Source: Podarcis muralis
Lineage: Eukaryota
DNA: 64,000 nt
Direction: 5' to 3'
NCBI RefSeq assembly: GCF_964188315.1
Contig: NC_135661.1
Location: forward strand, 45,260,001 to 45,324,000
Part shown: piece by piece, positions 37,201 to 55,682 of the stretch
Numbering within the stretch: position 1 is the first letter of the stretch
How the letters are laid out: the number at the start of each line of letters is the position of its first letter
Notes under the pieces: generated by a model
What the model was told of the DNA's origin: nothing
What the model saw: the letters and a program-made list of their open reading frames with translations, nothing else
Databases searched by the model: none
Program-made: the position numbers and the translations under genes

Positions 37201-39701
37201 GTGTCTCATCTTACAAAGCAGAAAGATGGTGAAGTGAACTATGGTGTTGGCAGGGCTTTTTTTCAGAGGGAACGCACAGGAACTCAGTTCCAGCACCTCT
37301 CAGGTGGGCACCATTGCTACTCTAAGAGAACAAGGGATGTGTTCATGGTAGAGTTGCCATATTTTGAAGAGGAAAAAAGAGGACATATTTGCCGACTTCT
37401 AGGTCACTATTGTCTACACTTACTGGCAGCAGCTCTCTAGGGTTTCTAGAAAAATAGCACTGGGAAGGAGAAAGTGTTGAAGCATGGAAGAGACCAGCCC
37501 AATTTAGCCACTGTTTCCAACCAGAATGTAAAAAACAAGCAAAACCAACCACCAGTTAACACCTATGATATTTAAAGACAGCAAGTGTGGCTGCAGCAAA
37601 ATCAGATTATTCCGGCTGCCAGTTTCTAGTAGAAACTCAAGATGGACATACTTGCACTACTAAGGATGCATGGTGATGTTTTTGCTTCGCTGTGAATTAA
37701 GTATGCTTGTCATTTCCCAAGTATCTCTTAAAAAAAAATTGAGAATATAATTTTCAGACATCATAATCCACCCAAAGTTAAGAATATCTAGGTTTCATTG
37801 ATTTCTAAAATAAATGACTTACATCACTTAACTTTAGCTGGATAGTGCCCAAACCTCATTATTTTGAAAGCAAGAAAGGAGCAAAATAAATAAGTTTAAT
37901 TTTTGAAACCTTGAGAACATTGAATCACAGAAACCTTTAGCAGCCTAAACTACAATTTTTTTTAATAAATCAAGATATCAATTAAAAACATCAACACTTA
38001 ACTTCTTGTGTCATTTGTATTTGATTTCTTCAATAAAACAGTCTGACTTTCTTTCATGCTGAAAATTCCAATTATACTTCATCTTTACTATCAAGGCCAA
38101 AAGAAATATCCACTGATGCAAATACCTGGTACAAAGAGAAACAGAACAACTTTCTTCACAGGCAGTAGGACAACAACATGAATACTCACCACTGGAGGTG
38201 GACAGAGTCATTACTGGAATTTCATCCCAAGGGTTTTCTAAGGAACCATCTGGGCTTTCAGATTCAGCTGCCAAAAAAAAGAGTGCAATCAATTGTTTCC
38301 CTGCAAATAGGCCTCTTAAAGGTGCAGGCGACCCTGAGGTCAGGTTAAAGTAATGGGAAAGAGCTCTGGACATTCAAACATTCTAGAAATTCTCTCTTCC
38401 AAGAAGGCAGCCGGTGTAACCAAAGTAGGACAGAACTACCCTCTCCCCTCCCAAGCTGTGTTAAGGTGGAGCATGGTCTGCCCTCAAAGTAAGTTCAAGA
38501 TCATTCAAAATATCATCTACAGAGCAGGTTTTCAGAAATTAGTTTAGTGGAAAAATAAGAGCAGAGGTTCTGAAGTTACATCTACTAATGCTTATGGAAT
38601 AGCTTTGAACCACATGCACAGCATTGTAGCTTGGGGGGTGGCATTTGATATCTTATCTCCACATCCTTTCAAGACTCCCTGGCCGCATATGAGACTACTT
38701 TCAGCCATCCACGGTCACAAATGTTTTTCCCCTGTCAAATAACACCTATTAAAAAATTTCATGCTATACTGGAGAACTGCACATCTGTAGTTATCTATGT
38801 GCTCCTTAGTCCAGTGAAGGCGGTGAAGGTCCTGTGTGAGTGCCTGGAGGCTGTTGGAGGATGGATGGCGGCTAACAGATTGAGGCTGAATCCTGACAAG
38901 ACAGAAGTACTATTTTTGGGGGACAGGGGGCGGGCAGGTGTGGGGGATTCCCTGGTCCTGAATGGGGTAACTGTGCCCCTGAAGGACCAGGTGCGCAGCC
39001 TGGGAGTCATTTTGGACTCACAGCTGTCCATGGAGGCACAGGTTAATTCTGTGTCCAGGGCAGCTGTTTACCAGCTCCACCTGGTACGCAGGCTAAGACC
39101 CTACCTGCCCGCAGACTGTCTTGCCAGAGTGGTGCATGCTCTAGTTATGTCCCGCTTGGACTACTGCAACGCGCTCTACGTGGGGCTACCTTTGAAGGTG
39201 ACCCGGAAACTGCAATTAATCCAGAATGCGGCCGCTAGACTGGTGACTGGGAGTGGCCGCTGGGACCACATAACACCAGTTCTGAGAGATCTGCATTGGC
39301 TCCCAGTACGTTTCCGAGCACAATTCAAAGTGTTGGTGCTGACCTTTAAAGCCCTAAACGGCCTCGGTCCAGTATACCTGAAGGAGCGTCTCCACCCCCA
39401 TCATTCAGCCCGGACACTGAGATCCAGCGCCGAGGGCCTTCTGGCGGTTCCCTCATTGCGAGAAGTAAGGTTACAGGGAACCAGGCAGAGGGCCTTCTCG
39501 GTAGTGGCTCCTGCCCTGTGGAACGCCCTCCCAGCAGATGTCAAAGCAATAAACAACTATTTTACTTTTAAAAGTCATCTGAAGGCAGCCCTCTTTAGGG
39601 AAGTTTTTAATGTTTGATGCTGTACTGTTTTTAATATTCAGTTGGAAGCCGCCCAGAGTGGCTGGGGAAACCCAGCCAGATGGGCGGGGTATAAATAATA
39701 A

Positions 39702-39747
<46 letters not shown>

Positions 39748-40004
39748 GGTTTCATCCCAAAATCTCATAGCAAAGCAAGCCACCAGAAGTATCTGAGCCT
39801 ACAGTAAATGGGTATGAAGCATGAATATTGTCAGGTTTTGAAGAGATTACAGAGCACATGGCTCTCAACCACCACTATCCAGACGTCATTAGATAGATTA
39901 AGAAGCATAAGCAAGTGAACTTGACATTTGTCACCTTTCCTTGTAACTGAGTCAAGGGGCACTTGCTGCAGCATTTCAAGGTCTCAGCAGATTTATTAGT
40001 TTGG

Positions 40005-40037
<33 letters not shown>

Positions 40038-43000
40038 TACCACCCTTCATCCAAGGATCACAGGATGGTTTACAGTATAAAAACACAAAAAATACCATAG
40101 TAACAAACAATAACTCCCTACACCCATTGCTCTGCCAACTACTGGCATGTGGCACCCAGAAGACTGCCCACTTGGGAATGCAATACTGAGGCAGAAAGAG
40201 GTTTCCACTCTTGGCTTACAAAGTTGGGCACCTAATGAAATTCAACTTCCTATGACTATTATTGAGATGCTGCTCAGTAGGAGCTTTGGATACAGACAAG
40301 CAACCATTATCTGTAAAACTACTGATTTCATAATACAGTGGTACCTCTGGTTACCTCAGGTTACAGACTCCGTTAACCCAGAAATAGTGCTTCAGGTTAA
40401 GAACTTTGCTTCAGGATGAGAACAGAAATCGTGCTCCGGTGGCGCAGCAGCAGAAGGCCCCATTAGCTAAAGTGGTGCTTCAGGTTAAGAATAGTTCCAG
40501 GTTAAGTATGGACCTCCGGAACGAATTAAGTACTTAACCTGAGGTACCACTGTAGTCTTCTAGACTTTGAGAGCTCAGTTGTGGACCAAGGTGTCTTTTA
40601 GATAATGTGATATCCCCTTAAGTAGAAAGCTGCACTTGTGTCAACAGAAAAGCCATACATCGCTTTTGTGGCCTTGCAGGCAGAGAGACAACTACTGCTA
40701 CTCACCACTGAAAAAAGATACAGTACTTTGCTCATCATCTTGAGTACTCTCAAGAATAGCTTGAGAGGGCTCTGTAAGATAAAGGACAATCTGATTTTTA
40801 GCACGGACTCCCCGAAAGAGACATGTATTAGAACCAGCCATTAAAAAACTAACACCATCAGTAAAAAATTGGAATGAAAATCACCATAAATATCACAACA
40901 ACCAAACCAAGAGGCAGAAGCAGCAAGCAAAAGCACTTTTCCATCCCCATTACACTTTACCCCTCCCCAAAGGGCTGGACGAAGAGGTGTCTTCACCTAC
41001 CAAGGAAACAAGACTGTGAAAGACTAGGCAGCATTTCTCTTATCTCCGATCTTAACACTTTGACTAGTCTTTAAAATGAAGCAAGGAAGAAAAAGGCACC
41101 AGACACCAAAAGCTCTTACTTTCTCTTTAAAAGACAGCAGGCAGAGGTTTATATGTGATCTTAGTACTGTGAAACTTGGAACTTTGAATCACCTGACATC
41201 ATAAGATGCCAGGGGATTGGTAGCCTGTCCCCCTGGCCTGTGGAGGGTGGGCCAGATTCAGTTCCTCTTATCTGACAAATGCACCACCTCAGCTCACAGC
41301 AGCCCTCACCCTTAATTCATAACAATCATTTTAATGGTAGCAAGATTATAAGAACTATGAGATTCTGTGCAAAAAAATAGCAGTGGTGGACAATAAAAAC
41401 AGCCAGACCTTGCACTCTCCCTTCTACAGTAGCTTGGGTATTAAAATGTAGCTCCTGGTTGTGGTCACAGAATTCTCTGTTCACAAAACCTCAACCTTGG
41501 TGTCTCAAACATACTTAGGCTTTGTTAGTCCTTATAGATTGCCATTAAAATGCTGCATTTAGTTATGAAGTTCTAGGGACACTTGATATTCTGAAATAAA
41601 CAGAACTGCTTCGTAATAAAGTAATGTGGCAAATTCATAGGCTAGAGCAAGAATGGGGAGCGCTCTGAATACTCAATTACAGTTCTCACAACCCCTAGCT
41701 ATTGACCATGTTGCCTGGGGCTGATGGGCCCAACAGCATAAGGAAGGCTCCATCCTTAAGTAAGGTAATCTTTCACCCAGCACTCTGGCACTCACTTGGT
41801 AGGTAGGACTTGTGAAGTAATGCTTCATTTTCTGCACTGATCGTTAACAGCTTGGCTGGGATGGCAAAGACATTCTTGTGAACCTGAAATCAGAATTGTT
41901 ACTCCACTTCTGCTTCCCTGCATAGCACAACAGATCCACGCAGACCCAGCCAATGCTTAACAGGCCAATAAATCTTACCAATTACATAATTGTGCAATAA
42001 AATAGAAAATAAGGGACCCTGGTGAGCAAATCTCAGCCATTTACAGCCAGTATGGAAATTCTACCAGATCCACTGATCTGAGAAATAAAAAAACCTGACA
42101 TCTGCTTTACTTTCAGGGATGAAGGTTTTATCAGTTTTGATCTGTATTTTTTATTCTTTATTCTTCCATCATCTATCTACCCATTCAACCATCACACCCA
42201 CACACCCCATCCCTGTGATTTTCAGTTGAGATGTCACAGGCAGAACAGAGAACAGACCTTATCTTGCTTGCGTTCCACCTGCCATTTGGTGTCAGGATAT
42301 ACAGCCAACTGCTCAGAATCCAATAGCTTGCTGGGGTTCAATAAACTGAGACAATCCTTGGCATTTTCTTTTAAAGTACTGAGTCGATCCTGCTTTATCT
42401 CCTGCAGTACTTCAGAAACAGATGATGGCTCTTTACAGGAAAAGGAAATGTGCACAGTAAAATAGGGTGTTAGCTTTGGAACAAGAGTCCCATAACATTT
42501 CGCATTAGAGCTAAATGAAAATGAAACAGATGCCTACAACACTAGGCCAATTTTAAAAGTTAGTCAGAAATATGCTTGCATCAGTCTTTTTGTAATTTGA
42601 TCCAAGGTAAACATATTCTGGCAATAACAAGGTGAAAATTTCTGCTGTCAGCAAAACACATAAATCAGGATGTAATCTTGCTATCTAAAAGCAGATTACA
42701 AAATGTTTGTCCTCTGCTGTAAGTGGCCCAGATGCACCGTTGTCCACTGACAAGGGATTTTGTTTAGTGGAATCCACCTCTTTTGTTGAATGTATACTAA
42801 TCTGGCTAAAACAGTTTTACCCATTCTTAGAACTGTAATGTTTTTATTTATTTTACAATTGTGTATTATATTGTTGTAACCTGCCCTGGGATCTGGTAAA
42901 GGGCAAGAAAGAAATCTTAGGAATAAATAAATCAAAGTGACACAGAGCTATGCAATGCAAACACCCATCAATTCTCTGTTAAGGCAATAAGGGACAGAAA

Positions 43001-46000
43001 AACCACTTACAGTAAGCCTGAAACTTACACTCACTTTACTTATGCAATCACAACCTTATGCAGGTGACCAAAAAATAAACAAATAAACAAATAAATCAGA
43101 AAACCACAGGAAAAATAGGGTTAAATCAAAATGTGGTAGAGAAACAACAGATGGCAATCCCATCTGCCATTGCTGTCACCTGGGAGAGTGTTTGGGCACC
43201 TTCAGAGAATCAGAGTGAGAAAGGGTCTAGCAATTGCATGGAGAGCAAGGGGAAAGTGACCTGAAAGTGAGCAAAAGTCATCTGGAATGTGTGGGGAAGG
43301 TTGACTGAGCAAGTGGGGGTGGTCTGAGAATGATGGGAGTTGATCTGAAAAGTGGTCCGGAAGCAAGGGGAAGAGGTTTTTAAAACTTTTTTTTTTATGG
43401 CTTCTTACAGGTCTTCCTGGCTTTATGTGTTTTGTCATTTATGTGCAGTTCCACATAGGTTGCGGGCTTGCAGTACTGCATGATGCAAGTATGAAATGGA
43501 GACTTAATTAATCTTATACCAACCAGCCCCTTCTATTAGGTTACACTAGGATTTCCCTTTAGAAACGTCCAATGCTCACTATACAATACCTGAGCTGGAC
43601 CAGGGCTGGAGAGCAAGGCTTTTCCTGAAAGACACAAACAAAATAGAACCTAGAGTTAAGAATGGCAATGGGTTTGCAAAACCTTCAAACAACCTCCTTT
43701 TTATGTCTGAATCAAATTTTGCTGTTAATTGATTTTATCTGACCCAGTTTGATCCACTCTAAGGATGACATTTTAGCACATCCCTATCCCAAAATACTTG
43801 TTATGACATCTTAGAAATGGCTAGTACAGTAAATCCTTCCTTCTTTCTGAACAGCTCATTCTTTCTCTACTTCTGGATTGATTACAAGAAAGTAAATATC
43901 TCAGTTAAGGGACTATTAGCTTCCTAATAATTTTCCTTACAAACATGTTCTACTGCAAAATTTGGCATTTGAAACAAGAGAAATAAAAACTAATGTGTGG
44001 ACTATGGACGATTCCTATATAGTAGAGTCTATATCATCATCTAGTGAAAAGTTATTGTCTGTACATACAGAACTATCGATCAATTCTAGTAATATATCTT
44101 GCTGTTCATTGCACTATCCTTTCTCCAAGGAGTTCAGAGTGGTGTCCATGAAGGTTATTCCATGTTATCTTCACAATAGCCCTTTCTGTACTGAGAACCT
44201 GAAGTTTTGAGCTCTGACTGTTCTAAAACAAAAACCTTACTAATATGTGCAAAACAGAACCTGAAACGTGTTTTGGTAAGCCACATAGAATATTTCCACT
44301 GCTATCTTAAGCTAACTCACATATTAAGCATGAAGAAACAACTGTTGGACCATGTACTTACTGCCACAGTTCCTTTATCTTCTCCAGTACTGAGGGCTCC
44401 CGGTTGCTATAAAAAGATGACATCTTAGCATTCCCAGCTTTTCACCATAGTCCAAAGTTACCACTTAAGCTTCTCAGAGCAGAAGAACAAATGGATTAAA
44501 GAATGGATTTCGAAACCTGACCGATCATATGAAAAATTACAGAATACTCTTAGTTTCTGAATATGGTAGATCCCAAGCCCATCAAAAGTTACCAAAGCCA
44601 CTTGGAGAATTATTATTATTTTCATTTTTAAAAACAACCAATTTGCAGCTTCAATTTCCAGTAACAAAAACATCACTAAGTAGCAATTCTCTCAAAAATG
44701 AATGGCTGCCTCCAGGGTACACTGCCTGTCATCTTTCCAAATCCCCTTCTTTGACAATTTGAGAAAGCTGCAGCACTGAACTAAAAGAGGTAAGGGCCTA
44801 ACTACACAGGACGCTAATGAAAACATTTTCCCCAAATATAAATTGGTATGCAGCAGAGGCTATTTTCATTTAAATTGTGGCTGGGAGTAGAAGATTTGAA
44901 CCTTCCCACACCATACACCTCACCATACCTGGAGTTTCTGAGATAAAACCATACATGCACCTCTGGGTTGGCACTTAAATTTTTAAAAGCCACAATACGA
45001 TTGCTAACCACCTCATTCACATCACAGGTAGTAAGGCTCTAACAAAATAAGACTGTTGGGGAAGGACACATACCAATTCATTCTGCTCACAAAACCTCAA
45101 CCTTGGTCTCTCAAACATACTTAAGCTTTGTCAGTCCTTATAGATTGCCAGTAAAATGATGGCATTTAGTTATGAAGTTCTAGGGACACTTGATATTCTG
45201 AAATAAACAGAACTGCTTCGTAATAAAGTAATTTGGCAAATTCATAGGCTAGAGCAAGAATGGGGAGCACTCTGAATACTCAATTACAGTTCTCACAACC
45301 CCTAGTCAGTTTAATTTACCAAGCTTAAGTAAAATGTGATGCAAACTCAAGCAGACTCATATAAAGACTCATCTAAGCGTTTTCTAGCCAACCTTCTTCC
45401 ATGTAAATTCACACATCAAGCTCATAACAAAGCCCAGAGAAAGTCTCACCAGTCTTGCTGCCTCCGTTCCCTCCGCTTCATGGGCATCACTCGGAAACAA
45501 TCAAGTACAAGGTAAAATCGACAATCCTCCTGAAAGTGAAGGAAAGGCAGAATTAGGTATGTTGTGCCTGGATGAGTATTCAGTCCAATATAAGAACAAC
45601 ATAATGTTCCCAAATTTGATTGAATTATTACTTGAATGCAGAGGTGTCAAGTTGCCCCCAAGACTGAGGGGGCCCAGTGTGCATCATGTGTGACGTTGCA
45701 CCATCTAGAGGAGGTTGAGCGCTTTGGCCACTGAAGCTGCGACACATGATGCACAATGCATGTGACATGCATGCATGACGCACGCTGGGGCCCCTCAACA
45801 TCAAGGGGAACCAGCTCCTTTCCAACAAATACTGAGGGGGCCAAAGACACATTAAACCCCCTAGAGTTAGAACACCTGTTTGAATGATATGCAGGGAGCG
45901 GTGGGAGGTGGAGAGAACAGATAGCAGGGCCCTTAACAAAATCCAAAAGCCCCCTTCTTGGCTTTCCCTAAATTTAATCATATTATGCTCCCACAGCATA

Positions 46001-49000
46001 ATACAGAATGAGAGATGATAGGAAAAGAAGACAGCCTTCAGTCCATTAATATTAATTAGCGTAAGATTTGTAGGGAGGGGGGGAATTACAAAATGCAAAT
46101 GTCTCCTTGCTCTCTCCAGCCAATATAGGCTTGCTTCGGGACAATGTAACTGTCCATGTGAGCTGCTCAAGACCAACCTGTGTCCCATATAAGCTGTGCC
46201 AACAAAATACCACTTGGGACAATAAAGGATCCTTCACATGTTAGCTTTGCCCCTCAGGTTCATGGGATAAATGTGGCCTATTCACAAGAAACTTAGGCGA
46301 GAAAAATCTACCCACAAAATGGTAACAATAAGTAAATAAATACAGTGGTGCCCCGCAAGACGAACGCCTCGCAAGACGGAAAACCCGCTAGACGAAAGGG
46401 TTTTCCGTTTTGGAGGCGCTTCGCAAAACGAATTTCCCTATGGGCTTGCTTTGCAAGACGACAGCCCATAGGGAAATCTCCGGGACAGCGGGGAAGCGCA
46501 GCGCGTCTTCCCCACTGTCCTCGGACCTCCTCCGAAGCCTGGCGGTGGGGCGGGAACACCTCCTCCCGCTGCCGCCGGGCTTCGGAAGGCTCCTCTGAAG
46601 CCGGGCGGTGGGGCGGGAACGCCTCCCCCCGCCGCCCGGCTTCGGAACGATGCTCCGAAGCCGGGCGGTGGGGAGGGAACACCTTCTGAAGGCCGGCGGG
46701 GGGCAAAAGTCTTTGTTCCCCCCTGCCTGCCTTCCCAGGGGCTTTTAAATCGCCCCGGACAGTGGAGAAGTCCTCAGCTGTCCCGGGGCGATTTTAAAAT
46801 GCCGCCCGCCAGCATTTTCAGATTGCCCCGGACAGCGGAGAAGTCCTCCGCTGTCCCGGGGTTTTTTAAAATGCTGGGGGTGGGAAGAAAAGCCCTTGTT
46901 CCCCCCCCCCCAGCCTTCAGAAGAGGTCGGGGGACAGACTGTCCCTGGACCTGGTCTGAAGGCGGTTTCCATAGGAACGCATTAATTGATTTTCAATGCA
47001 TTCCTATGGGAAACCGTGCATCGCAAGACGAAAAACTCGCAAGACGAAGAGACTTGCGGAACGAATTAATTTCGTCTTGCGAGGCACCACTGTAATGAGT
47101 TCCCTGTTATTAAGATAAAGACTTGCCTTTCCTTTAACAAGTATCATTTAAGTTTTCAATAACCTCATGAGGTGGGTTAGGCTGAAATATAGTGACATGT
47201 TCAACACCATCTTCAGGTTCAACATTTAAAACTTTGAAAATAAATTGCAGTCACGGGGGGGGGGGGGGGACACAAAAAACACCATTTTCAGGGCCAGAGG
47301 GAGATTGGAAACTTATGCTTCACCACAACCACCCCCATTTTCAGGACGTAACTACTCACAAACTCACCTTAAGAGAGTGTGCTTTCCCAAGACTATAATG
47401 CTGTATCAATTTTTAAAAAGGAGGTGGGAGAAGTCACCTCACAATGATACTTCTTCTGCCTTAAAGATGGCAGACACTCAGACTGCTGACAAACTCAAAT
47501 CAGACAAAGGTTTGTGCCAGACAGCCTTCTGCATCAGGAGAAAAGTCAACCAACTCAAGAGTCACACCCTGACTATTATCCTAGCAGAACTTCTGAGGAG
47601 CAGATGAACCCTAATACCACAGATAAAATACAAGCCAACCTGTGGAGGCTGGCTGAGGCCTTCACATGTTTTCCCGCCAATTTATGTGAGGCAATGCAGC
47701 TGCACCTGATTCTAAGTACCGTATTTACTGGAATGTAATGTGCACATTTTTTTGCAAAATTAAGGTGCACATTTGATTTGATGGCACATTTTCAATCGCC
47801 AGCAAATACTTTTTTGGTTTCAAGGTTTTGAAAATTGAGGTGCACATTAGATTTTGGTGGTGTATTAGATTCTTGTAAATATGACTACTTCTTTCTAAAG
47901 CACCTGCTTTCTAGGCTCATAATAGAACCTGAGGTGATGTCAACGACATTTTTGTTCATCATAGGTCGGGTCAGAGGAAACAAAGGCAATTTTGGTAAAG
48001 AAATTGAGGCTGCAATCCAATTACTGTACATAGATTTAAACTGATTAATGGTAGGTGTTTCATTTTATTTATTTATTATTTTATTACACAACATACAAAT
48101 GCACTATACACAAAATACATAATAAAAATAACAACCAAACCCTGCCCACCCACAAACCAATATCCCTCATCCCCCCCCACCAGCTCCCACAAACACATTT
48201 AAAAGACAGTATAAGATGTTAATCAGCCCAAGGTCTGGCTGAAGAGGAGCGTTTTCACCTGGTGCCTAAAGGGGTGTAATGAAGGTGCCGGCTGAAACCT
48301 CCCTAGGGAGAGCATCCCACAAATGGGGAGCCACTGCAAAAAAGGCCCCATTCTTGTGTTGCCACCCTCCAGACCTCTGGTTGGGGAGGCACACAAAGAA
48401 AGATGAGGGTCACAGAATCCAGGTTGGTTTATATGGGGAGAGGCAGTCCTTGAGGTACTGTGGTCCTGAGCTGTTTAAGGCTTTATAGGTCAAAACCACC
48501 ACTTTGAATTGGGAAGGAAACTAATTGGCAGCCAGTTCAGTTGGGCCAGAATCAGTCTTCCTCTGGTGAGCAAGCTGGCCAACAAATTCTGCAAATTTTA
48601 CTGATCACCAGTAAAGAAAATAAAGTGAATTAATTCCAACAAAGATGGCAAAAGATGCTAGAAATGAACATCACTGAAGAAATATGGGGAAATACCATAT
48701 TTTTCCATGTATAAGACACCCCCATGTATAAGATGACCCCTATTTTTTAAACCCAAAATTAAGAAATTAAGTTGTTTAGCTTTTTGGTGAGGTGGGGGAA
48801 GTCACTTCCACCAATCGCCCACCCACCTGCCCGCCACTGTCAATCGCACAAGACAGCCACTGCCGATCGCACCTCACCGCAGTCGCCAATTGTCTGCCGC
48901 TTGCCACCACCAACAGCCCACCCGCCCACTTGCTGCAGCCGCCAATCGCCTGCCTCACCACAGCCACCAATCGCCTGCCCAATTGCCACAGCCACAGCCA

Positions 49001-52000
49001 ATCACCGTCAAGTCTTGCCGCAGCCACCAATCGCCCACCGAATTGCCACTGCCAATCTCCTGCTTGCTACTGCCATTAATCGCACATCCCGCCTCTGCAT
49101 TCACTATCCATGTATAAGACGACACCCAATTTTTGCCTTTTTTAAAAAGCAAAAAAGCATAGTCTTATACATAGAAAAATACGGTAAATTCTCTAATAAT
49201 TTGATATCCTGCAGGCCCAGCTTCCTATTACCTCAGTGGCAGAATCCCATGGTAGGCAGCAGACTTTCCTAAAACCAACAGTCCTTTAGAGGCATCTGGG
49301 TGAATGCATGTGAGCTAAAAGTGTGGTGTGAGAATACACACAAGCCGTAAGGCTTCAGTGTCTCTGTGCTCACTGGTTGCACGCCTGACCTTTGAGCACT
49401 GAGTGCAAAGATTCTAGTCACGTTCAGTTTTAAATGGTTAGACTCCTTCCCACCGTAAGAAACTCAGTATAATCGCGATCTTGACTGCCCAGGTTCAGCT
49501 GAGCATGGATAGGACTTACCTGTAGATAACTGGGAGAGGGTGGCAATGCAGTTTTTTACGGATTGGGTTTTTTATGTTTTTAGATATGTTGTAACCCACC
49601 CAGAGTGGCTGGGGAAACCCAGCCAGATGCATGGGGTATAAACAATAATAAATTAAATAATAAATATTCATGTGCCTTACCACTTTAGCTTCTTCTTTAA
49701 AACAAACCCTAAAATTCTGCAGGATGATGAACTGGCCAACAATACTGGAAAATCCAGACTGGGGTAGAGCACTAAAACAAGAAAGAAAGAAACATGTATT
49801 GCCTCTCTTGATAGCCATGCCCAATGGTTTGCCACATTGTCTAAAAGGCTGCAATTCCAAGCAAAATTTGGAAGAATCCATTCATTTCCTCAGAATACTG
49901 AAACTTTCAGCTTCTGTTGTTAAAAAAGGGAAATCCAAAAACAAAGACTGTAGATAACAGCAAATATATGTTTCGAGAATATATTTATTTTTAAATACTT
50001 GTACATCATCATTCAAAGGCTGCAGGTAGTTTACATCAAAATACAGTAAAATAATATAATCATGCAAGTAGTGCGCTTGTGTGCTCTGTGTGACCCAGAT
50101 TATGTAGTCCTTACTTTCCTTTAGCTAGGAACACATATTGCTCATCACTCATCCATATGTCGCTCCCTCCTCACACTACATTGCTCAGGTGGGGAGATCT
50201 TTCAAGTTCTACAAAAGCCCATGTGGAAAGTGCAGAATGAAGTTTGCCAACAGTGTGCAAATGCAAATGTGCACAAATCGGTTTGCAAAAATTATTCTAA
50301 GAACAGAACTTACACTGTCTCAGAGTGAATAGAGTAACTATGTATGCAGGACCTGAAATATTATGGAATTTACTCTTCCATGCTACATACTCTGCAAATA
50401 GAAATTAACAACTGGTTGTCTGCCATAGGTTCTCTTGTGTGTCTTAAAAAGTGAAGAATGCATGAAAGGTCTAAAGTTAATTTTTAAAATGGAATTCTTG
50501 CATTATGAGACTTCTGGTAGATTTTGTAACACAGAATTTTAGATTGCTTGGCACAGAATGGTATGCAGATTGCTAATGTGCTAGCTTTTGTACATGCACA
50601 TACAAAATGTACATGTTTCATAAAATTTATACACCACATAATTCTAAGAGAAAGCCTAAAAGTGGTTTAAAATCCCAAAGCAGTAATAAAAATGAAAAAC
50701 ACAAGGAACCATAACAAGGGTCTCTAACCAAAGCAAGGTGCTCTGTAGATAAAACCAGGAAAGTCACCACTACCTAAGCCTCTCAGAAATCTATTGCAGC
50801 AAGGCCCATGGCAGTGTTCATTTAAAAGCTAGCTAACCTAAGGATTAGCTACTGATCAGGACTGACAGAGGATACAGCTTTATGCCTTAAGCCTCTGGTT
50901 TGTGGAAGCTATGATGGGACAAGGGAAAAGTGGAGTGTGTGCTGATTCACACAGTAGCCTTTTGGAATCCTTCAACCTGGCGGGGGGGGGAGGGGAGAGA
51001 GAAAGAATCTTGCACAATTTAGTGAAAGAATCCAGTTACTTGGGCCACCAAAGAGATGTTGCTTTAACACTGGATGATGAAGTCACTGACCTCCATAAAA
51101 CAACTGATTAGTAATTTAAACTGGCAATGTATCCACATCAGCACAACGAAGAGAAGTATGAGACCATTTTAATTAGTTTTTCTTAAGAATTATGCATTGT
51201 AGTGTACCGCTTGTGGCGCTGTGGGTAAAAGCCTCAGCGCCTAGGGCTTGCCGATCGAAAGGTTGGCGGTTCGAATCCCCGCAGCGGGGTGCGCTCCCGT
51301 TGCTCGGTCCCAGCGCCTGCCAACCTAGCAGTTCGAAAGCACCCCCGGGTGCAAGTAGATAAATAGGGACCGCTTACTGGCGGGAAGGTAAACGGCGTTT
51401 CCGTGTGCTGCGCTGGCTCGCCAGATGCAGCTTTGTCACGCTGGCCACGTGACCCGGAAGTGTCTGTGGACAGCGCTGGCCCCTGGCCTCTTAAGTGAGA
51501 TGGGCGCACAACCCCAGTGTCTGTCAAGACTGGCCCGTACGGGCAGGGGTACCTTTACCTTTAGTGTACTGCTTAGTAAAATAATTAGATAAAATACCGT
51601 AATTATCTTCCAAATTAATATTATTAAAACACTGTAATCTATCTCCCCAAAGTCTCCCTTGCTTATTTTAATACTTTTTATTTTTTGTTTGAATATTATT
51701 TTAATTTTAGACTATTCAGTTTGTTTTTAAAGGTTGTGTGACAGACCCTCAAAACATTTCCATTTTTCTTAAGTGCTTGCCACAAGCTCAGCAAGATAGC
51801 AACAAGGCTGGAGAGCAGTTTGGAATCACCAGTATTTATTGCTACTCTATCAGGTTCCCTATAATAGGCTGTTTACCCAAACACCAATTTCACCCTGGCA
51901 AATTTGATGATTAGGACCTGGGAGACCTGGGTTAAAATCCCCTCTCACCCAGGAAGCTCACTGGACAACATTGGGCCACTCACCGTCTCTCAGACTAAGG

Positions 52001-55000
52001 TACCTCACAGGGTTGTTCAGAGGATGAAATGTAGAGTGAGGAGAACTATGTACACCACCTTAAGCCTATTGACGGAAAGCTGAGATATAAATGTAGTTCA
52101 TACATAAAGTGTAAAAATTACCATTTTGTCATCTGAACAGCTTTGGCTGTAACATCCACTTGGATATAATGATGCCCATCTGCGACGCACAGAATAGCTG
52201 CTGGAAGCTGCTCATCATGATCTAGAGCCTTTGTTTCATTTAGAACCTAGCAATAAATTGGGAGATAAGGCAGGAAAAGAAGTCAGGTATTTCCCACACA
52301 TATTAAAAATAGGGACCAAGCCACTCTAGAGTCTTTCATTCATTTTTTGGGGGAGCCGGGGCAGGATGAGGAAGATATGGAGACCCACAAAGTTTTGAAA
52401 GTCACAGTATGGCAATTTAGATCTGCATATGAGAAAAAAGCAATAGTTGTGGGAGCAGGGGACTTCCCATTTTTCAGAGGATGAATACTCCTGTTGCAAA
52501 AGGAATCATCTTAAAAAGATCAGTCTCCTAACAAGAAGAAAAACTCTCTTCTAAGCTGGTATGTGCTGACTTCCAATCTTTACAAGTACTTGTATTAAAA
52601 GACAAAATGGTGGGAAGGGGGGAGACTTCAATCTGCTTCCCAACTAAACAGGGGCACCATTTTAGTGAATCAAACTATTGTAATTGATCTAACTGATCAA
52701 CCAACTTAAACATTGCAGCTCCGGCTATAAAGCACATAGGCTGCAATCCTATCCTCATTTATCTGGGGGTAAGCTCCATTGAACACAGAGGGACTTGCTT
52801 CTGAGCAAGCATGCATGAGATTGCTCTAATATAAAGCAACTCTTATGCTCAAGCAAAAGGTCTCCTCTGGATTCAGAAGGCAGAACATAGCCACTGCCTC
52901 AGGAGCAGCAGAAGCATCAATTATGTCCACATTAATGTGGTGTAAGAGTGTATAATCAGGACATGGGACACGCAGGTTCAAATCCCCACTCTGCTATGAA
53001 GCTTTGTGTCAGTCTTTCTCTCTCTCTCTCGCTCACTCTGCCTAATGAACCTCAGAGCAAAACCACTCAAAGTGGTGGTCCATGGACTGGGGGAGGTCTG
53101 TGAACCATTAGCTACTGGTCCATGGTAACTTCACCACAGCCCAAGTTGGGTTGGACACTTCAAGATAGCTTGAGAAGCACCGCCTCACAAGGTTGTTGTA
53201 AAGAGAAAAGTGAGGGTGGAGACATTGTTCTAAGCTCCTTAGAGGAAGGGGAGTATGGAATTTTATTTTATTTTAAAAATTAAGAGTTCCCCATTCATCA
53301 CTGCTCAAAAAGTCACATGAATATACCCTCAGGACATGCCCAAGTTGACCCTCTTCTCTGGCTTCAGAATCCTTGTACTCCAGGAGAAGATTCACGATCC
53401 AAGGTTCCAAGTAGCAGGGCCTGTTTGTCTGGCTATCTTCATTGTCTAAACTGGAAAAAATAAGTAATTAAAATTACTAAGGCATGGGGAAATGTGCAAA
53501 AGTGGCATGGCAAAAAATGTTGCTTGATGGTATCACACTAAATATCTTCCAGATTGCTATACCATTAGAAGAAGAAGAAGAAGAAGAAGAAGAAGAAGAA
53601 GAAGAGGAGGAGGAGGAGGAGTTTGGATTTGATATCCCGCCTTTCACTCCCCTTCAGGAGTCTCAAAGCGGCTAACATTCTCCTTTCCCTTCCTCCCCCA
53701 CAACAAACACTCTGTGAGGTGAGTGGGGCTGAGAGACTTCAAAGAAGTGTGACTAGCCCAAGGTCACCCAGCAGCTGCATGTGGAGGAGCGGAGACGCGA
53801 ACCCGGTTCCCCAGATTACGAGACTACTGCTCTTAACCACTACACCACACTGGCTCTCCATTGTGCATTTATTCATCATTAAGAAAACAGAAAAACACAG
53901 AGAATGTTTGAGACAACATCATATTCAATGACCTCACCTTCTCATGTAACCATCAGTATAGTAAACAATTTGCAAGTTGGTATACAGAAAGTTCATCCAA
54001 GAAGCTCTTCATTTTAACTAAAGCACTATTCTTATTTGATAAGAAACAGAAACATGTACAGTGGAACCTCATGTTACGTACCGTCCTCCTTGCAAGCACT
54101 GCAGGTTACAAGCTCCACTAACCCAAAAGTAGGTCCTCTTATTGTGAACTTTGCCCCGGGATGCGAGTAGAAGTCGCGCACCAGCAGCGCGGCAGCAGCA
54201 GGAGGCACCATTAGTGAAAGCGCGCCTCATGTTACGAGCAGTTTCGGGTTGCAAGCTTCCAGAACAGATAAAGTTTGTAACCGGAGGTGCCACTGTATTC
54301 TAAGCCAGGTGCAGTGTGGTACAAAATTAGGTGTTTTGAGGAATAAGTTATGAGCATCATATAATTTTTATTTTAAAAAACACCCTTGATTGCAAAATTT
54401 ACTCCTGTCGCACATCACTCTATTTTCAGATACTTTTGCCAGAAATCTGGAGGGCTAGAAACTTGCAATATAAATATAAGTGTTGCAGAATTCTGTATTA
54501 GAGTCCAGATTTAGAGCAAAACTGGGGTGCAGGCAAGCAGTTCCTTAGAACAGAAGATCTTCCTTCCTGATACAGTTTCACCCATCAGTATCACTCCTTT
54601 CTCTTTTCTATTGAGATTCCCAGATTGCACTATGGGATTAGGAAGGGGTTTGCATTCACCCAATACCAACATAAAAAGCTTGTACAGACATGCCCACAAG
54701 GTCACTCACAGGGTACTCCAAGTGGTCTTTATCATGCTGGTGAATAGCATAAGGTTACTAGATTTTTTTCAATGAATCTGGGGACACTTCACTCTGAAAT
54801 GAGTCAGAATGATAGGATTTTGTCAGGGGACTGATTTGTAAATCTGGGGACTGTCCCCGGGAAACGGGGGTGTCTGGTAACCTTAGAATAGCAGCCTAAT
54901 GCAGATATGAAAGGAATATACAGGGCTGGTCGTTGCTGGTCCAAGAAGAACTTACAATTTTGGACACCCACTGCAGAGCTACTATAAATGTGGGTTGATG

Positions 55001-55682
55001 CAAAAACAGCAGACTCTCATTAAATCTAAAAGTAAAACCTGTTTTGACAGAACACTTTCTCAGACATTAGACAAATTCAGACTAAATTGAGTGGGAGAAT
55101 TATTCTACAACCTATTTTATTCCCTGGTAAGAGGAAAAATATAGAGATAGGTGAACTATTACTATTTATTTATTTATTTAATTTATATACAATAGCTTTA
55201 GGTATGGGTTTTACACACGTATTTTATGCCTGGCAGATAGGACTGGTTATATTACTTGGAAGGAAGCCCCAGCCCATCAAGATGCACGTGAAACTTCCAT
55301 AGAGTAAAACCCTGCCCACACTTACATAGAAGCTAAGCCTCACTGCAATCGTTCGGGACTCGCAGCCCAATAAGCCTACGTAGTACGGTGAATGGATAGC
55401 ATTTGCGCTGGAAGTGCATCCAAGTGGTCCAAAGCAAAAGATGCCGTGCGCGCCTCTGTACAGCAACGGAAAACTAATGTCCCGAGGTGGGAGGGCTGCT
55501 TCGGAAAATCAATATCCTACAGCGAGTAAAAGTCCGATTAAAAGGGAATTACGAAGCACTCAAGAGCTTCGCCACCCGCCAGCTTATTCCGCGGCCTCTG
55601 CCTGTCTGCTACACCAACGACAGGATCTGCAAACTTACCCCGTGGGCTTTGAGTCCCGCAGAGACCTCCGCTCCCGATTCAT
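34188..55682 (-). CDS. ACD: ACD (TPP1) shelterin subunit, complete; exons in transcript order 55682-55639,53450-53327,52246-52122,49771-49681,45529-45450,44406-44362,43624-43590,42430-42258,41883-41796,40771-40706,38267-38190,35793-34994,34609-34530,34245-34188
   Basis: 14 exons with AG/GT ends splice to 1887 nt (628 aa + TGA). OB fold: YLEPWIVNLLL, GHVLRVL, AILCVADGHHYI, GFSSIVGQFIILQN, FYLVLDCF. POT1-binding region: SVSEVLQEIK...CLSL...TKW...VFAIPAKLLTIS. TIN2-binding C-terminus: FHFTYMPPTSELCSQV...LLAWACWVF. The small 45-nt and 35-nt exons match the recalled human exon structure. Confidence 0.93.
34530..34609 (-). CDS. ACD: ACD exon EYVRGAPFHFTYMPPTSELCSQVHST(R) (TIN2-binding motif)
   Basis: ttcctgcag|GAGTAT...ACAAG|gttagt; 80 nt; matches human [24 protein letters not shown]. 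Confidence 0.92.
34994..35793 (-). CDS. ACD: ACD large Ser/Thr-rich linker exon (800 nt)
   Basis: ttgctttggcag|ACACA...CAGCAG|gtaaat; lies inside the 317-aa ORF 34916-35869; phase 1-0. Confidence 0.88.
38190..38267 (-). CDS. ACD: ACD linker exon ESESPDGSLENPWDEIPVMTLSTSS
   Basis: ttttttttggcag|CTGAA...CAGTG|gtgagt; 78 nt, phase 1-1. Confidence 0.85.
38811..39747 (+). mobile_element. L2-clade LINE, 5'-truncated: RT C-terminal ORF2 segment (open to 39617), 3' UTR and (TTA)n tail; antisense within an ACD intron
   Basis: WMAANRLRLNPDKTEVL, SRLDYCNALYVGLP, LHWLPVRFRAQFKVLVLTFKAL are typical L2 ORF2 motifs; the intact frame suggests a young copy. Confidence 0.92.
40006..40038. repeat. (AAT)n microsatellite
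   Basis: Direct reading. Confidence 0.9.
40336..40552. mobile_element. Tc1/mariner MITE (CAGTGGTACCTC family)
   Basis: TIRs and TA flanks; internal sequence similar to 7986-8227. Confidence 0.9.
40706..40771 (-). CDS. ACD: ACD linker exon PSQAILESTQDDEQSTVSFFS
   Basis: tcttacag|AGCCC...CAGTG|gtgagt; 66 nt, phase 1-1, open frame. Confidence 0.72.
41476..41698 (+). repeat. 223-bp direct repeat, copy 1 (ACD intron)
   Basis: About 96% identical to 45082-45305 by eye alignment (8 substitutions, 1 indel). Confidence 0.95.
41796..41883 (-). CDS. ACD: ACD exon VHKNVFAIPAKLLTISAENEALLHKSYLP
   Basis: gatttcag|GTTCAC...ACCAA|gtgagt; 88 nt; matches human VYTVPSSMLCISENDQLIL. Confidence 0.92.
42258..42430 (-). 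CDS. ACD: ACD exon PSSVSEVLQEIKQDRLSTLKENAKDCLSLL...TKWQVERKQDK (POT1-binding region)
   Basis: cctgtaaag|AGCCA...GATAAG|gtctgt; 173 nt, phase 1-0. Confidence 0.9.
43590..43624 (-). CDS. ACD: ACD micro-exon KSLALQPWSSS
   Basis: tgtctttcag|GAAAAG...CTCAG|gtattg; 35 nt, phase 2-1. Confidence 0.82.
44362..44406 (-). CDS. ACD: ACD exon (C)NREPSVLEKIKELW(Q)
   Basis: tttttatag|CAAC...GGCA|gtaagt; 45 nt, phase 2-2; matches human NQDLDVQKKLYDCL. Confidence 0.9.
45082..45305 (+). repeat. 224-bp direct repeat, copy 2 (ACD intron)
   Basis: See 41476-41698. Confidence 0.95.
45450..45529 (-). CDS. ACD: ACD exon EDCRFYLVLDCFRVMPMKRRERRQQD
   Basis: cactttcag|GAGGAT...GACTG|gtgaga; 80 nt; matches human [24 protein letters not shown]. 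Confidence 0.92.
46343..47092. mobile_element. Second copy of the GC-rich non-autonomous Tc1/mariner element (750 bp)
   Basis: Same TIRs and TA TSD; highly similar to 26248-27155, same orientation. Confidence 0.9.
47719..47885. mobile_element. Degenerate Tc1/mariner-type MITE (CCGTATTT TIR family)
   Basis: ta-ccgtatttactggaat ... attcttgtaaatatgac-ta. Confidence 0.6.
48062..48545 (-). mobile_element. Degenerate L2 LINE 3' fragment
   Basis: Reverse strand resembles the LPISFxxQFKVVVLTYKAL...GPQYLKDCL end of ORF2, plus an AT-rich tail. Confidence 0.7.
48695..49184. mobile_element. Tc1/mariner-type MITE (CCGTATTTTTCC...TIR family) with internal CCAATCGCC minisatellite
   Basis: ta-ccatatttttccatgtataagac ... 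gtcttatacatagaaaaatacgg-ta. Confidence 0.8.
49575..49665 (+). mobile_element. L2 3' tail fragment, 15 nt from an ACD donor site
   Basis: ccagagtggctggggaaacccagccagatg...ggggtataaa. Confidence 0.75.
49681..49771 (-). CDS. ACD: ACD exon (C)ALPQSGFSSIVGQFIILQNFRVCFKEEAKV
   Basis: ttcttgttttag|TGCT...AAAGTG|gtaagg; 91 nt, phase 2-0; matches human [19 protein letters not shown]. Confidence 0.9.
51213..51561 (+). mobile_element. Sauria SINE, near full length (same subfamily as 12990)
   Basis: A box gtggcgctgtgg, B box ggttcgaatcc, tail gtacctttacctt; 13-bp TSD tagtgtac(c/t)gctt. Confidence 0.92.
51905..52095 (+). mobile_element. MIR/Squam-like SINE remnant
   Basis: gggagacctgggttaaaatccc...cctcacagggttgttc core. 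Confidence 0.6.
52122..52246 (-). CDS. ACD: ACD exon VLNETKALDHDEQLPAAILCVADGHHYIQVDVTAKAVQMTK
   Basis: ttgctag|GTTCTA...AAATG|gtaatt; 125 nt; matches human [17 protein letters not shown]. Confidence 0.92.
52935..53250 (+). mobile_element. Older MIR/Squam-like SINE interrupted by a hAT-MITE-like insert (about 53055-53180)
   Basis: tRNA-like head and B box ggttcaaatccc; the core cctcacaaggttgttg resumes after the insert. Confidence 0.55.
53327..53450 (-). CDS. ACD: ACD exon LDNEDSQTNRPCYLEPWIVNLLLEYK...GQLGHVLR (OB fold start)
   Basis: ttttttccag|TTTAG...CTGAGG|gtatat; 124 nt; matches human VLRPWIRELIL...GQLLE. Confidence 0.92.
53568..53856 (-). mobile_element. tRNA-derived squamate SINE (Squam3/MIR-like) with (CTT)n tail
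   Basis: Head gagccagtgtggtgtagtggttaagag, B box gggttcgcgtctcc, core cctcacagagtgtttgttg, (GAA)n on the + strand. Confidence 0.8.
54059..54295. mobile_element. Tc1/mariner MITE (diverged CAGTGGTACCTC family)
   Basis: cagtggaacctc...gaggtgccactg with TA flanks. Confidence 0.85.

What the first reader, a model, noticed from the sequence alone, without database searches (positions are those of the whole stretch)
49681..49771. Acidic TEL-patch knuckle WEEKE replaced by CALPQ, and R180 replaced by Q
Seen: the spliced sequence VADGHHYIQVDVTAKAVQMTK-CALPQ-SGFSSIVGQFIILQN aligns without gaps to human [41 protein letters not shown], anchored on both sides (DG...GF...G...LQ). E168, E169, K170 and E171 become A, L, P and Q; R180 becomes Q; D166 becomes K. 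Established: this loop is the core TEL patch, and K170del causes human Hoyeraal-Hreidarsson syndrome/dyskeratosis congenita. With E215K and R96E, most telomerase-facing residues are changed, while the POT1-binding (42430-41796) and TIN2-binding (34609-34188) modules stay recognisable. Inference: selective remodelling of the shelterin-telomerase interface in this lineage.
Basis: partly seen in the sequence, partly recalled or inferred. Interest (0 to 1): 0.8.

Follow-up and report, generated by a model that had tools for sequence, protein, structure and literature searches.

The report
Reptile TPP1 lost its acidic loop
The wall lizard's telomere protein TPP1 really lacks the acidic loop that human TPP1 uses to hold telomerase, but every reptile and bird sampled shares this old change while sharks, frogs and mammals keep the acidic pair, and its broad outline is already published.

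Summary
Observation confirmed. Window 49771-49681 (minus strand) is a coding exon of the Podarcis muralis ACD/TPP1 orthologue. With the upstream exon it reads ...QMTK-C-ALPQ-SGFSS..., and HMMER aligns this without gaps to human ...[14 protein letters not shown].... So E168A, E169L, K170P, E171Q, F172S, R180Q and E215K are real.

Interpretation partly supported. The change is not specific to the wall lizard. None of 44 sauropsid sequences (32 squamate, 2 turtle, 2 crocodilian, 8 bird) has the acidic 168/169 pair. All 3 cartilaginous fishes, 2 lobe-fins, 2 basal ray-fins, 5 of 6 amphibians and the named mammals keep it. R180Q and E215K belong to squamates (28/32 and 24/32).

The loop is therefore not "generally unconserved outside mammals", as Myler et al. 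2021 state. In non-sauropsid jawed vertebrates, positions 168, 169, 212 and 215 are among the most conserved OB columns.

The gene is single-copy and syntenic with CARMIL2, and it nests correctly in the gene tree. The window holds no alternative acidic exon. Two squamate contigs that look like transcripts carry the non-acidic loop.

The TERT side could not be tested. This scan already followed up the sister residue E215K on this same DNA. Interest is moderate.

The parts
49681..49771 (-). ACD/TPP1 coding exon: last base of the Cys codon (W167 position), then ALPQSGFSSIVGQFIILQNFRVCFKEEAKV. It carries the positions of human E168-F174, R180 and L183.
   Evidence: AG acceptor and GT donor read. 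100% tblastn match to P0006/P0007. Gapless HMMER alignment to human TPP1 2I46.
52122..52246 (-). Upstream OB exon (VLNETKALDHDEQLPAAILCVADGHHYIQVDVTAKAVQMTK plus TG of the split Cys codon).
53324..53467 (-). OB exon with the N-terminal OB (NOB) region, ...CYLEPWIVNLLLEY...; E at the human R96 position. Ends are tblastn alignment ends, not verified splice sites.
55638..55682 (-). Alternative first coding exon of isoform X6 (MNRERRSLRDSKPTG), in a GC-rich promoter-like region. Ends are approximate.
45452..45529 (-). OB exon EDCRFYLVLDCFRVMPMKRRERRQQD, with M at the human L212 position and K at the human E215 position.
   Evidence: Subject of earlier finding s1-172990.
41782..44405 (-). Four small exons (44405-44361, 43626-43591, 42443-42255, 41886-41782) encoding the OB-PBD hinge and the POT1-binding domain. 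Ends are approximate.
   Evidence: tblastn. The sauropsid profile A1 aligns over OB+PBD of human TPP1 (E=6.9e-27) and to the PBD-only chain 7S1T_B (E=8.6e-4).
34994..40808 (-). Exons of the Ser-rich variable linker (40808-40701, 38370-38191, 35818-34994; alternative 3' end at 35102 in isoform X5). Ends are approximate.
34191..34612 (-). Two terminal exons (34612-34526, 34247-34191) encoding the C-terminal TIN2-interacting motif.
   Evidence: tblastn. phmmer match to human TPP1 residues 409-443 of chain 7QXA_O (E=6.9e-4) and to the TIN2-bound peptide 5XYF_B (E=0.16).

Best explanation
The exon belongs to the single-copy ACD/TPP1 orthologue of the common wall lizard; expression is inferred from relatives' contigs, not shown for Podarcis.

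SHOWN. Its TEL-patch loop is non-acidic because of two old, clade-wide steps.
1. The acidic pair at human positions 168/169, which jawed vertebrates otherwise keep, is replaced by small or hydrophobic residues in every sauropsid sampled (reptiles and birds). In the same clade position 171 became an almost invariant Gln.
2. In squamates the basic residue at 180 became Gln and the Glu at 215 became Lys. An acidic residue appeared at position 96.

The OB fold is intact and as constrained as the POT1- and TIN2-binding modules. Loop positions 167-169 now vary freely, while Q171-S-G-F stays conserved.

INFERRED. [quoted passage not shown] Lizard TPP1 therefore cannot use that electrostatic helix-capping. 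The most likely reading is that sauropsid TPP1 still contacts telomerase through its OB domain, but through a re-wired, less acidic surface matched by changes in TERT TEN/IFD-TRAP. The alternative, that the OB has stopped recruiting telomerase, is less likely.
For: - Identity and splicing. Pfam TPP1 PF10341 at 49.1 bits against a cut-off of 26.5.
- Fold: AF2 model with pLDDT 85, TM 0.74-0.77 to human TPP1 OB 2I46/5I2X/5I2Y, rmsd about 2.1-2.5 A over about 131 columns.
- Residue table over named taxa. Both 168 and 169 are acidic in 3/3 chondrichthyans, 2/2 lobe-fins, 2/2 non-teleost ray-fins, 5/6 amphibians and 4/4 named mammals. This holds in 0/44 sauropsids.
- Position 171 is Q in 88/93 sauropsid sequences that have data there.
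- Position 180 is K/R in cartilaginous fishes, lobe-fins, 5/6 amphibians, 3/4 named mammals (platypus has Q), turtles, crocodilians and 123/123 birds; gar has Y. It is Q in 28/32 squamates.
- Position 215 is E in cartilaginous fishes, lobe-fins, non-teleost ray-fins, amphibians, mammals, crocodilians and 51/123 birds, Q in turtles and in the other 72 birds, and K in 24/32 squamates.
- Column entropy. In non-sauropsid gnathostomes, positions 168, 169, 212 and 215 lie at the 9th, 19th, 10th and 6th percentile of OB columns. In squamates, positions 167, 168 and 169 lie at the 98th, 77th and 92nd. Net charge of 166-172 is -3 to -5 in non-teleost anamniotes, about -2 in the three teleosts and in mammals, and +0.7 on average in squamates.
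- Orthology. A gene tree built without the trait columns gives amniotes 100/99*, sauropsids 98/93* and squamates 100/100*. A CARMIL_C exon lies at 8653-9057 in the window. There is one locus per squamate species and no second family.
- Domain constraint within squamates: OB 60%, PBD 65%, TIN2 motif 61%, linker 47%, loop 45%.
- Expression. Logan contig L001 (2715 nt, uninterrupted 638-codon ORF, skink-like) reads through the junction as S-K-C-L-L-P-Q-S-G-F. L002 (agamid-like) does likewise.
- Mechanism in human: PMC10055720. K170del disease: PMC4180972.
Against: - No TERT sequence could be examined, so co-evolution is untested.
- No binding or activity data exist for any sauropsid TPP1-telomerase pair in the papers searched. 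Myler et al. call this an open question.
- The high variability of positions 167-169 in squamates fits a surface that is no longer a contact at all.
- Sampling is thin for turtles (2), crocodilians (2 sequences, one genus) and full-length birds (8). Tuatara is missing.
- Teleosts also depart from the ancestral pattern, so loss is not unique to sauropsids. They keep only one acidic residue at 168/169 and have lost K/R180 and E215.
- Polarity rests on outgroup comparison only. Formal ancestral reconstruction was not available.
- Transcript evidence is from other squamates, not from Podarcis.
Confidence: 0.55

Rival explanations
1. The OB-telomerase interface was lost in sauropsids, not re-wired. 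The TEL-patch face no longer recruits telomerase, which reaches telomeres by another route. The OB domain is kept for another role.
For: All five charged human TEL-patch residues are gone in squamates. Positions 167-169 are among the most variable OB columns in squamates, and the loop evolves at linker-like rates. In human TPP1, Glu-to-Gln at these sites already abolishes processivity stimulation.
Against: The OB domain is as conserved as the PBD and the TIN2 motif within squamates. Q171 is nearly invariant across sauropsids (88/93), and S172-G173 are conserved in squamates. L183 and L212 stay hydrophobic. Archelosaurs keep K/R180, and crocodilians and many birds keep E215. To my knowledge (not checked here), telomerase interaction is the only function assigned to this OB face.
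Confidence: 0.25
2. Nothing lineage-specific happened. The TEL-patch loop is simply unconstrained outside mammals and drifts everywhere. This is the published generalisation and the reader's own refutation condition.
For: Myler et al. [quoted passage not shown] K170 and E171 are indeed mammal-specific states. Position 167 is variable everywhere. Teleosts are divergent.
Against: Positions 168, 169, 212 and 215 are among the most conserved OB columns across cartilaginous fishes, lobe-fins, basal ray-fins, amphibians and mammals. On the gene tree the acidic pair needs only 3 state changes. By the residue table these fit the sauropsid stem, teleosts and one frog.
Confidence: 0.12
3. A recent, wall-lizard- or lacertid-specific adaptive remodelling of the interface. 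This is the narrow reading of the reader's 'this lineage'.
For: Only the exact string C-A-L-P-Q is confined to Podarcis and Zootoca.
Against: The same non-acidic pattern occurs in geckos, skinks, amphisbaenians, anguimorphs, iguanians and snakes, and in turtles, alligators and birds.
Confidence: 0.02
4. Artefact. A mis-called exon, an alternative exon or a paralogue supplies an acidic loop in the expressed protein.
For: The window alone cannot exclude a paralogue elsewhere in the genome. No Podarcis transcript was seen directly.
Against: Canonical splice sites with a single AG after the pyrimidine tract. All four P. muralis sequences retrieved (isoforms X3, X5, X6, X7) use this exon. tblastn of the exon-equivalent from 38 vertebrates finds only this exon in the window at E<0.1; the sole acidic hit is a GAA/TTC microsatellite on the wrong strand. 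There is one ACD locus per squamate species and no second family among 1.84 billion representatives. Intronless contigs from two other squamates carry the non-acidic loop.
Confidence: 0.03

Closest known systems
Mammalian TPP1/ACD OB domain with the TEL patch (human PDB 2I46; telomerase-bound 7QXA, 7TRE)
   Same: Orthologous gene with the same OB fold (TM 0.74-0.77). Same domain order OB - POT1-binding domain - Ser-rich linker - TIN2 motif. Same loop length and register. Hydrophobic residues are kept at 183 (I) and 212 (M), and G173-F174 are kept.
   Different: W167C, E168A, E169L, K170P, E171Q, F172S, R180Q, E215K, R96E. The loop carries no acidic residue, so the glutamate helix-capping of TERT helices described for human (PMC10055720) cannot operate.
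Non-mammalian vertebrate TPP1 as described by Myler et al. 2021 (Genes Dev 35:1625, PMC8653790)
   Same: The lizard is an instance of their statement that human TERT-contacting residues are not conserved outside mammals. They note that recruitment in non-mammals is an open question.
   Different: My wider sampling shows that this statement is too coarse. The acidic 168/169 pair, K/R180, L212 and E215 are conserved in cartilaginous fishes, lobe-fins, non-teleost ray-fins and amphibians. They are lost specifically in sauropsids (loop) and squamates (180, 215), and partly in teleosts.
Human loss-of-function TEL-patch alleles: K170del (Hoyeraal-Hreidarsson/dyskeratosis congenita; PDB 5I2X), K170A (5I2Y), Glu-to-Gln/Ala at 168/169/171, E215K
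   Same: The lizard's natural residues (A168, Q171, K215, no Lys at 170) are of the same kind as substitutions that cripple human TPP1-telomerase function. The E215K/TERT K78E charge swap is from my own knowledge of Schmidt et al. 2014, not checked here.
   Different: These states are fixed, ancient and clade-wide in viable animals. They are not sporadic disease alleles, so the partner surface or the recruitment route must differ.
Est3 (budding yeasts) and ciliate TEBP-beta OB folds
   Same: Same OB-fold superfamily. They are recovered as weaker structural matches (9SWN_C, 2M9V, 6Q44, 1JB7_B), and their telomerase-facing surfaces diverge in sequence.
   Different: Remote homologues with 9-15% identity. 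The lizard protein is a true TPP1 orthologue.

Membership tests
TPP1/ACD shelterin subunit | N-terminal OB fold matching Pfam PF10341 above the curated cut-off | tested here: met
   P0006 (100% identical to the window's exons) scores 49.1 bits against a cut-off of 26.5, E=7.2e-13.
TPP1/ACD shelterin subunit | Three-dimensional similarity to the solved human TPP1 OB domain | tested here: met
   AF2 model with pLDDT 85 and pTM 0.82. The top 8 PDB matches are all human TPP1, TM 0.67-0.77, E down to 6e-12.
TPP1/ACD shelterin subunit | POT1-binding domain directly after the OB fold | tested here: met
   Profile A1 aligns continuously over OB+PBD of human TPP1 (positions 7-242 to chain residues 8-238, E=6.9e-27) and to the PBD-only chain 7S1T_B (E=8.6e-4). 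Single-sequence phmmer of the PBD alone found no TPP1 chain. Binding itself was not tested.
TPP1/ACD shelterin subunit | C-terminal TIN2-interacting motif | tested here: met
   phmmer of the last 51 residues matches human TPP1 409-443 (E=6.9e-4) and weakly matches the TIN2-bound peptide 5XYF_B (E=0.16).
TPP1/ACD shelterin subunit | Orthology: position in the gene tree and conserved neighbourhood | tested here: met
   Gene tree gives amniotes 100/99*, sauropsids 98/93*, squamates 100/100*. A CARMIL_C exon lies at 8653-9057. CARMIL2-ACD adjacency in human is from my own knowledge.
Mammalian-type TEL patch (telomerase-recruiting surface of TPP1) | Acidic loop E168, E169, E171 | tested here: not met
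   A, L and Q in the window. 0/44 sauropsids have both 168 and 169 acidic.
Mammalian-type TEL patch (telomerase-recruiting surface of TPP1) | K170 and aromatic F172 in the loop | tested here: not met
   P and S in the window. P/A at 170 in 29/32 squamates and S at 172 in 27/32.
Mammalian-type TEL patch (telomerase-recruiting surface of TPP1) | Basic R180 | tested here: not met
   Q in the window and in 28/32 squamates. K/R in the other sauropsids.
Mammalian-type TEL patch (telomerase-recruiting surface of TPP1) | Hydrophobic L183 and L212 | tested here: inconclusive
   I and M in the window, so hydrophobic character is kept although the residues differ.
Mammalian-type TEL patch (telomerase-recruiting surface of TPP1) | Acidic E215 | tested here: not met
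   K in the window and in 24/32 squamates. This agrees with earlier finding s1-172990.
Mammalian-type TEL patch (telomerase-recruiting surface of TPP1) | Physical contact with TERT TEN and IFD-TRAP, with stimulation of recruitment and processivity | not testable with these tools

The most novel reading that the evidence does not exclude
The acidic Glu-Glu loop, Glu215 and a basic residue at 180 form a TPP1-telomerase contact surface common to jawed vertebrates, over 400 million years old by my own dating (a hagfish and three invertebrates have acidic loops too, less securely aligned), not a mammalian idiosyncrasy as published. Sauropsids dismantled it in two steps: the loop on the reptile/bird stem, then 180 and 215 on the squamate stem, where 215 is charge-reversed. 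If so, reptiles and birds recruit telomerase through a re-wired TPP1-TERT interface, with matching changes expected in TERT TEN/IFD-TRAP. One possibility is a natural counterpart of the engineered E215K/K78E charge swap.
Probability: 0.4. Interest if true: 0.65.

Novelty: new variant of a known kind. Interest (0 to 1): 0.42.

Why it matters
The TEL patch is how human shelterin brings telomerase to chromosome ends, and its mutations cause telomere disease. The literature treats it as a mammalian feature and leaves open how non-mammals recruit telomerase.

The pattern found here sharpens that question. Sharks, lungfish, coelacanth and amphibians carry the core acidic pair plus E215 and a basic 180, so a TEL-patch-like mechanism can be tested in them. 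Reptiles and birds are natural nulls for the acidic loop. Squamates are the extreme case, with every charged contact replaced and one reversed.

This gives concrete comparative experiments in chicken, lizard, frog and human pairs, and a defined place in TERT to look for compensating changes. It may also bear on the unusual telomere biology reported for reptiles and birds. For the wall lizard itself there is nothing special: its sequence is typical of its order.

Tried and rejected
- The 30-residue exon alone against PDB gave no hit. It is too short, and the whole OB domain was needed.
I did not work round it, so polarity rests on outgroup distribution and on counts of state changes.
- The TERT side could not be examined. 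No TERT sequence lies in the window, all protein-search quotas went to TPP1, I did not type a sequence from memory, and the scan's notes hold nothing on TERT.
- The third homologue search returned only length-filtered partial bird entries. It gave no tuatara and no extra turtles or crocodilians.
- An exact look-up of the Podarcis isoform in the contig collection found nothing, so there is no direct Podarcis transcript evidence.
- The PBD alone against PDB by single sequence gave only a chance FtsA hit. The profile search was needed.
- One literature query was badly posed and returned unrelated papers. Targeted queries for the TEL patch in chicken, zebrafish or reptiles found nothing beyond Myler et al., and their supplement is not held.
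- Alternative acidic exon: rejected.
- Paralogue: no sign of one.
- Site-wise dN/dS was not attempted, because coding DNA was available for only three squamates.
Full report
WHAT IS IN THE SEQUENCE

On the minus strand, a pyrimidine tract and an AG (49773-49772) precede an exon that runs from 49771 to 49681. A GT donor follows at 49680-49679. The upstream exon (52246-52122) ends ...ATG ACA AAA TG|gtaa.

A search with the large linker ORF, then with a full-length relative, identified the gene. It is the ACD/TPP1 orthologue of Podarcis muralis, LOC114602020. NCBI isoforms P0006 and P0007 match the window's exons at 100% and use the same junction. tblastn maps about 14 coding exons between 55682 and 34191. 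P0006 passes the Pfam TPP1 model.

IS THE ALIGNMENT TO THE HUMAN TEL PATCH SOUND?

Four lines of evidence say yes.
- phmmer of the lizard OB domain against PDB sequences finds human TPP1 OB (2I46, 7TRE, 7QXA; E about 3e-7). The alignment has no gap through the loop: t-k-c-a-l-p-q-s-g-f over [10 protein letters not shown].
- MAFFT on 38 vertebrate OB domains and a profile alignment give the same register.
- The number of residues between the conserved Ala of the preceding helix and position 180 is the same in shark, mammal and lizard sequences read in the alignment.
- An AlphaFold2 model of the lizard OB (pLDDT 85) superposes on human TPP1 OB crystal structures at TM 0.74-0.77. A model of a shark OB (pLDDT 85) has its strands and helix in the same register.

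The substitutions are therefore real: D166K, W167C, E168A, E169L, K170P, E171Q, F172S, R180Q, L183I, L212M, E215K and R96E.

HOW WIDE IS THE CHANGE?

I collected squamate orthologues with names. I then ran a profile search over 1.84 billion representatives and named the key hits by cluster look-up. A further search added 119 bird entries, most of them partial.

Positions 168 and 169:
- Both are acidic in 3/3 cartilaginous fishes (loop E-Q-E-E-E/D-N/D-Y), coelacanth and lungfish, paddlefish and gar, 5/6 amphibians, and platypus, bilby and lemurs.
- A hagfish, amphioxus, an annelid and an abalone also show acidic clusters here, but those alignments are less secure.
- None of the 44 sauropsid sequences that cover the loop has the pair. 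Examples are alligator E-S-A-Q-V-Q, birds E-N-A/T-H-x-Q, turtles E/K-C-A-Q-L-Q, and squamates K-x-S/A/F-L/M/P-P/A-Q.

Other positions:
- Position 171 is Gln in 88/93 sauropsid sequences.
- Position 180 is K/R in cartilaginous fishes, lobe-fins, 5/6 amphibians, 3/4 named mammals (platypus has Q), turtles, crocodilians and 123/123 birds, but Gln in 28/32 squamates.
- Position 215 is Glu in cartilaginous fishes, lobe-fins, non-teleost ray-fins, amphibians, mammals, crocodilians and 51/123 birds. It is Gln in turtles and in 72 birds, and Lys in 24/32 squamates.
- K170 and E171 are mammalian states. Anamniotes have E/D and H/N/Q there.
- Teleosts are divergent. They keep one acidic residue at 168/169 and have no K/R180 and no E215.

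Conservation statistics:
- Across 19 non-sauropsid jawed vertebrates, positions 168, 169, 212 and 215 rank at the 9th, 19th, 10th and 6th percentile of column entropy in the OB domain.
- Across 31 squamates, positions 167, 168 and 169 rank at the 98th, 77th and 92nd percentile.
- Net charge of 166-172 is about -3 to -5 in non-teleost anamniotes, about -2 in the three teleosts and in mammals, and +0.7 on average in squamates.

IS IT THE SAME GENE, AND IS THIS THE EXPRESSED FORM?

- A maximum-likelihood tree built without the trait columns recovers amniotes (100/99*), mammals sister to sauropsids (98/93*) and monophyletic squamates (100/100*, on a long stem of 0.57). An old paralogue does not explain the pattern.
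- On that tree the acidic pair needs three state changes. By the residue table these fit the sauropsid stem, teleosts and one frog.
- The window also carries a CARMIL C-terminus exon. Together with the earlier notes that place CARMIL2 just upstream, this fits the CARMIL2-ACD neighbourhood I know from human 16q22.
- Each squamate species gave one ACD locus, and the exhaustive profile search gave no second family.
- tblastn of the exon-equivalent segment from 38 vertebrates found only this exon in the window. The one acidic hit is a GAA/TTC microsatellite on the other strand.
- Two Logan contigs with uninterrupted ORFs read straight through the junction with the non-acidic loop. L001 is skink-like with 638 codons, and L002 is agamid-like. 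That they are transcripts is my inference from the absence of introns.

WHAT STAYS CONSERVED?

- The sauropsid profile aligns continuously over the OB and POT1-binding domains of human TPP1 (E=6.9e-27) and hits a PBD-only chain.
- The C-terminal 51 residues match the human TIN2-interacting region (E=6.9e-4).
- Within squamates, mean pairwise identity is 60% for the OB, 65% for the PBD, 61% for the TIN2 motif, 47% for the linker and 45% for the eight loop residues.
- The OB is thus still under constraint. The first half of the loop is relaxed, and Q171-S-G-F is conserved.

MECHANISM

[quoted passage not shown] Glu-to-Asp is tolerated but Glu-to-Gln is not, and F172 inserts into TEN (PMC10055720). 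K170del causes Hoyeraal-Hreidarsson syndrome (PMC4180972).

The lizard has A, L, Q and S at these sites, so this mode of contact cannot operate. That step is an inference from the human structure.

I judge a re-wired OB-telomerase interface most likely (0.55). The reasons are that the OB and Q171 remain constrained and that the archelosaurs are intermediate: the loop is lost, but 180, and in crocodilians and many birds 215, are kept. Outright loss of the contact is the main rival (0.25).

COMPARISON WITH WHAT IS KNOWN

Myler et al. 2021 (PMC8653790) already state that the TEL patch and NOB are conserved in mammals.

An earlier follow-up in this scan reached the same view for E215K on this same DNA (s1-172990). 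I confirm its factual points. My sampling, however, shows that 'conserved only in mammals' is too coarse. The acidic pair, K/R180, L212 and E215 are conserved across non-teleost anamniotes, and the losses are clade-specific.

I found no paper stating this polarity. The library is incomplete, though, and Myler's figure and supplement could not be read.

VERDICT

- Observation: confirmed.
- Interpretation: partly supported. The interface is selectively remodelled with the other modules intact. The lineage is Sauropsida for the loop and Squamata for 180 and 215, not the wall lizard.
- Interest: moderate, 0.42. The gene and the general non-conservation are known. The ancestral-versus-derived pattern and the squamate extreme are a useful, testable refinement.

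Noticed in passing
window 49681-49771 compared with proteins P0009/P0010: Two sets of Podarcis muralis ACD models differ inside this exon. The window and P0006/P0007 have Pro at the K170 position and Ile at the L183 position. The UniRef/nr models P0009/P0010 have Leu and Val. They also differ elsewhere (97% identity in the linker exon). This suggests within-species or between-lineage amino-acid variation in the loop itself.
   Followed up: partly
proteins P0001, P0002 (Podarcis raffonei LOC128419274 isoforms X2, X4); equivalent to window about 41800-34191: Predicted isoforms start at MISAENEALL..., after the POT1-binding domain. They lack the OB fold and the PBD altogether. Whether such truncated TPP1 forms are expressed was not examined.
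   Followed up: no
window 8653-9057 (+): An ORF with a Pfam CARMIL_C match (E=3e-11). It is probably a 3' exon of CARMIL2 lying upstream of ACD on the opposite strand, which fits conserved synteny.
   Followed up: partly
window 46528-46684, and a look-alike region near 26270-27000: A GC-rich 60-bp tandem repeat (2.5 copies) lies in the ACD intron between the exons at 49681 and 45529. Translated fragments of the same element recur near 26.3-27.0 kb, so it is probably a dispersed repeat with internal tandem units.
   Followed up: no
window 38721-39617 (+), 33780-34079 (-), 48226-48474 (-), 6299-6346 (-): Recurring ORF fragments share a motif of the kind ...LHWLPV...FKVL.LTFKALNGLGP.YL.... They look like tails of a squamate LINE/SINE family inside and around ACD. 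Only the first (38721-39617) was scanned; it had no Pfam match.
   Followed up: partly
window about 53570-53650 and about 39700-39760: A TTC/GAA microsatellite and an AAT microsatellite lie in ACD introns. The first produced a spurious 'EEEEFGF' tblastn hit on the plus strand.
   Followed up: yes
proteins P0173 (platypus), P0090 (bilby): Even within mammals the loop is not invariant. Platypus has W-E-E-K-Q and Gln at R180. The bilby has W-D-E-R-P. 'Strictly conserved in mammals' seems to hold for placentals rather than for all mammals.
   Followed up: partly
bird proteins P0214-P0332: Position 215 is split among birds (Glu in 51, Gln in 72 of 123), while position 180 is Arg in all 123. Most B10K bird ACD entries are partial models that start inside the loop exon.
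   Followed up: partly
teleost proteins P0084, P0087, P0095 and unnamed teleost-like hits: Teleost TPP1 keeps an acidic stretch in the loop (such as Q-E-Q-E-D-R-E) but lacks K/R180, and the L212/E215 region is unalignable in detail. This looks like a second, independent departure from the ancestral surface.
   Followed up: partly
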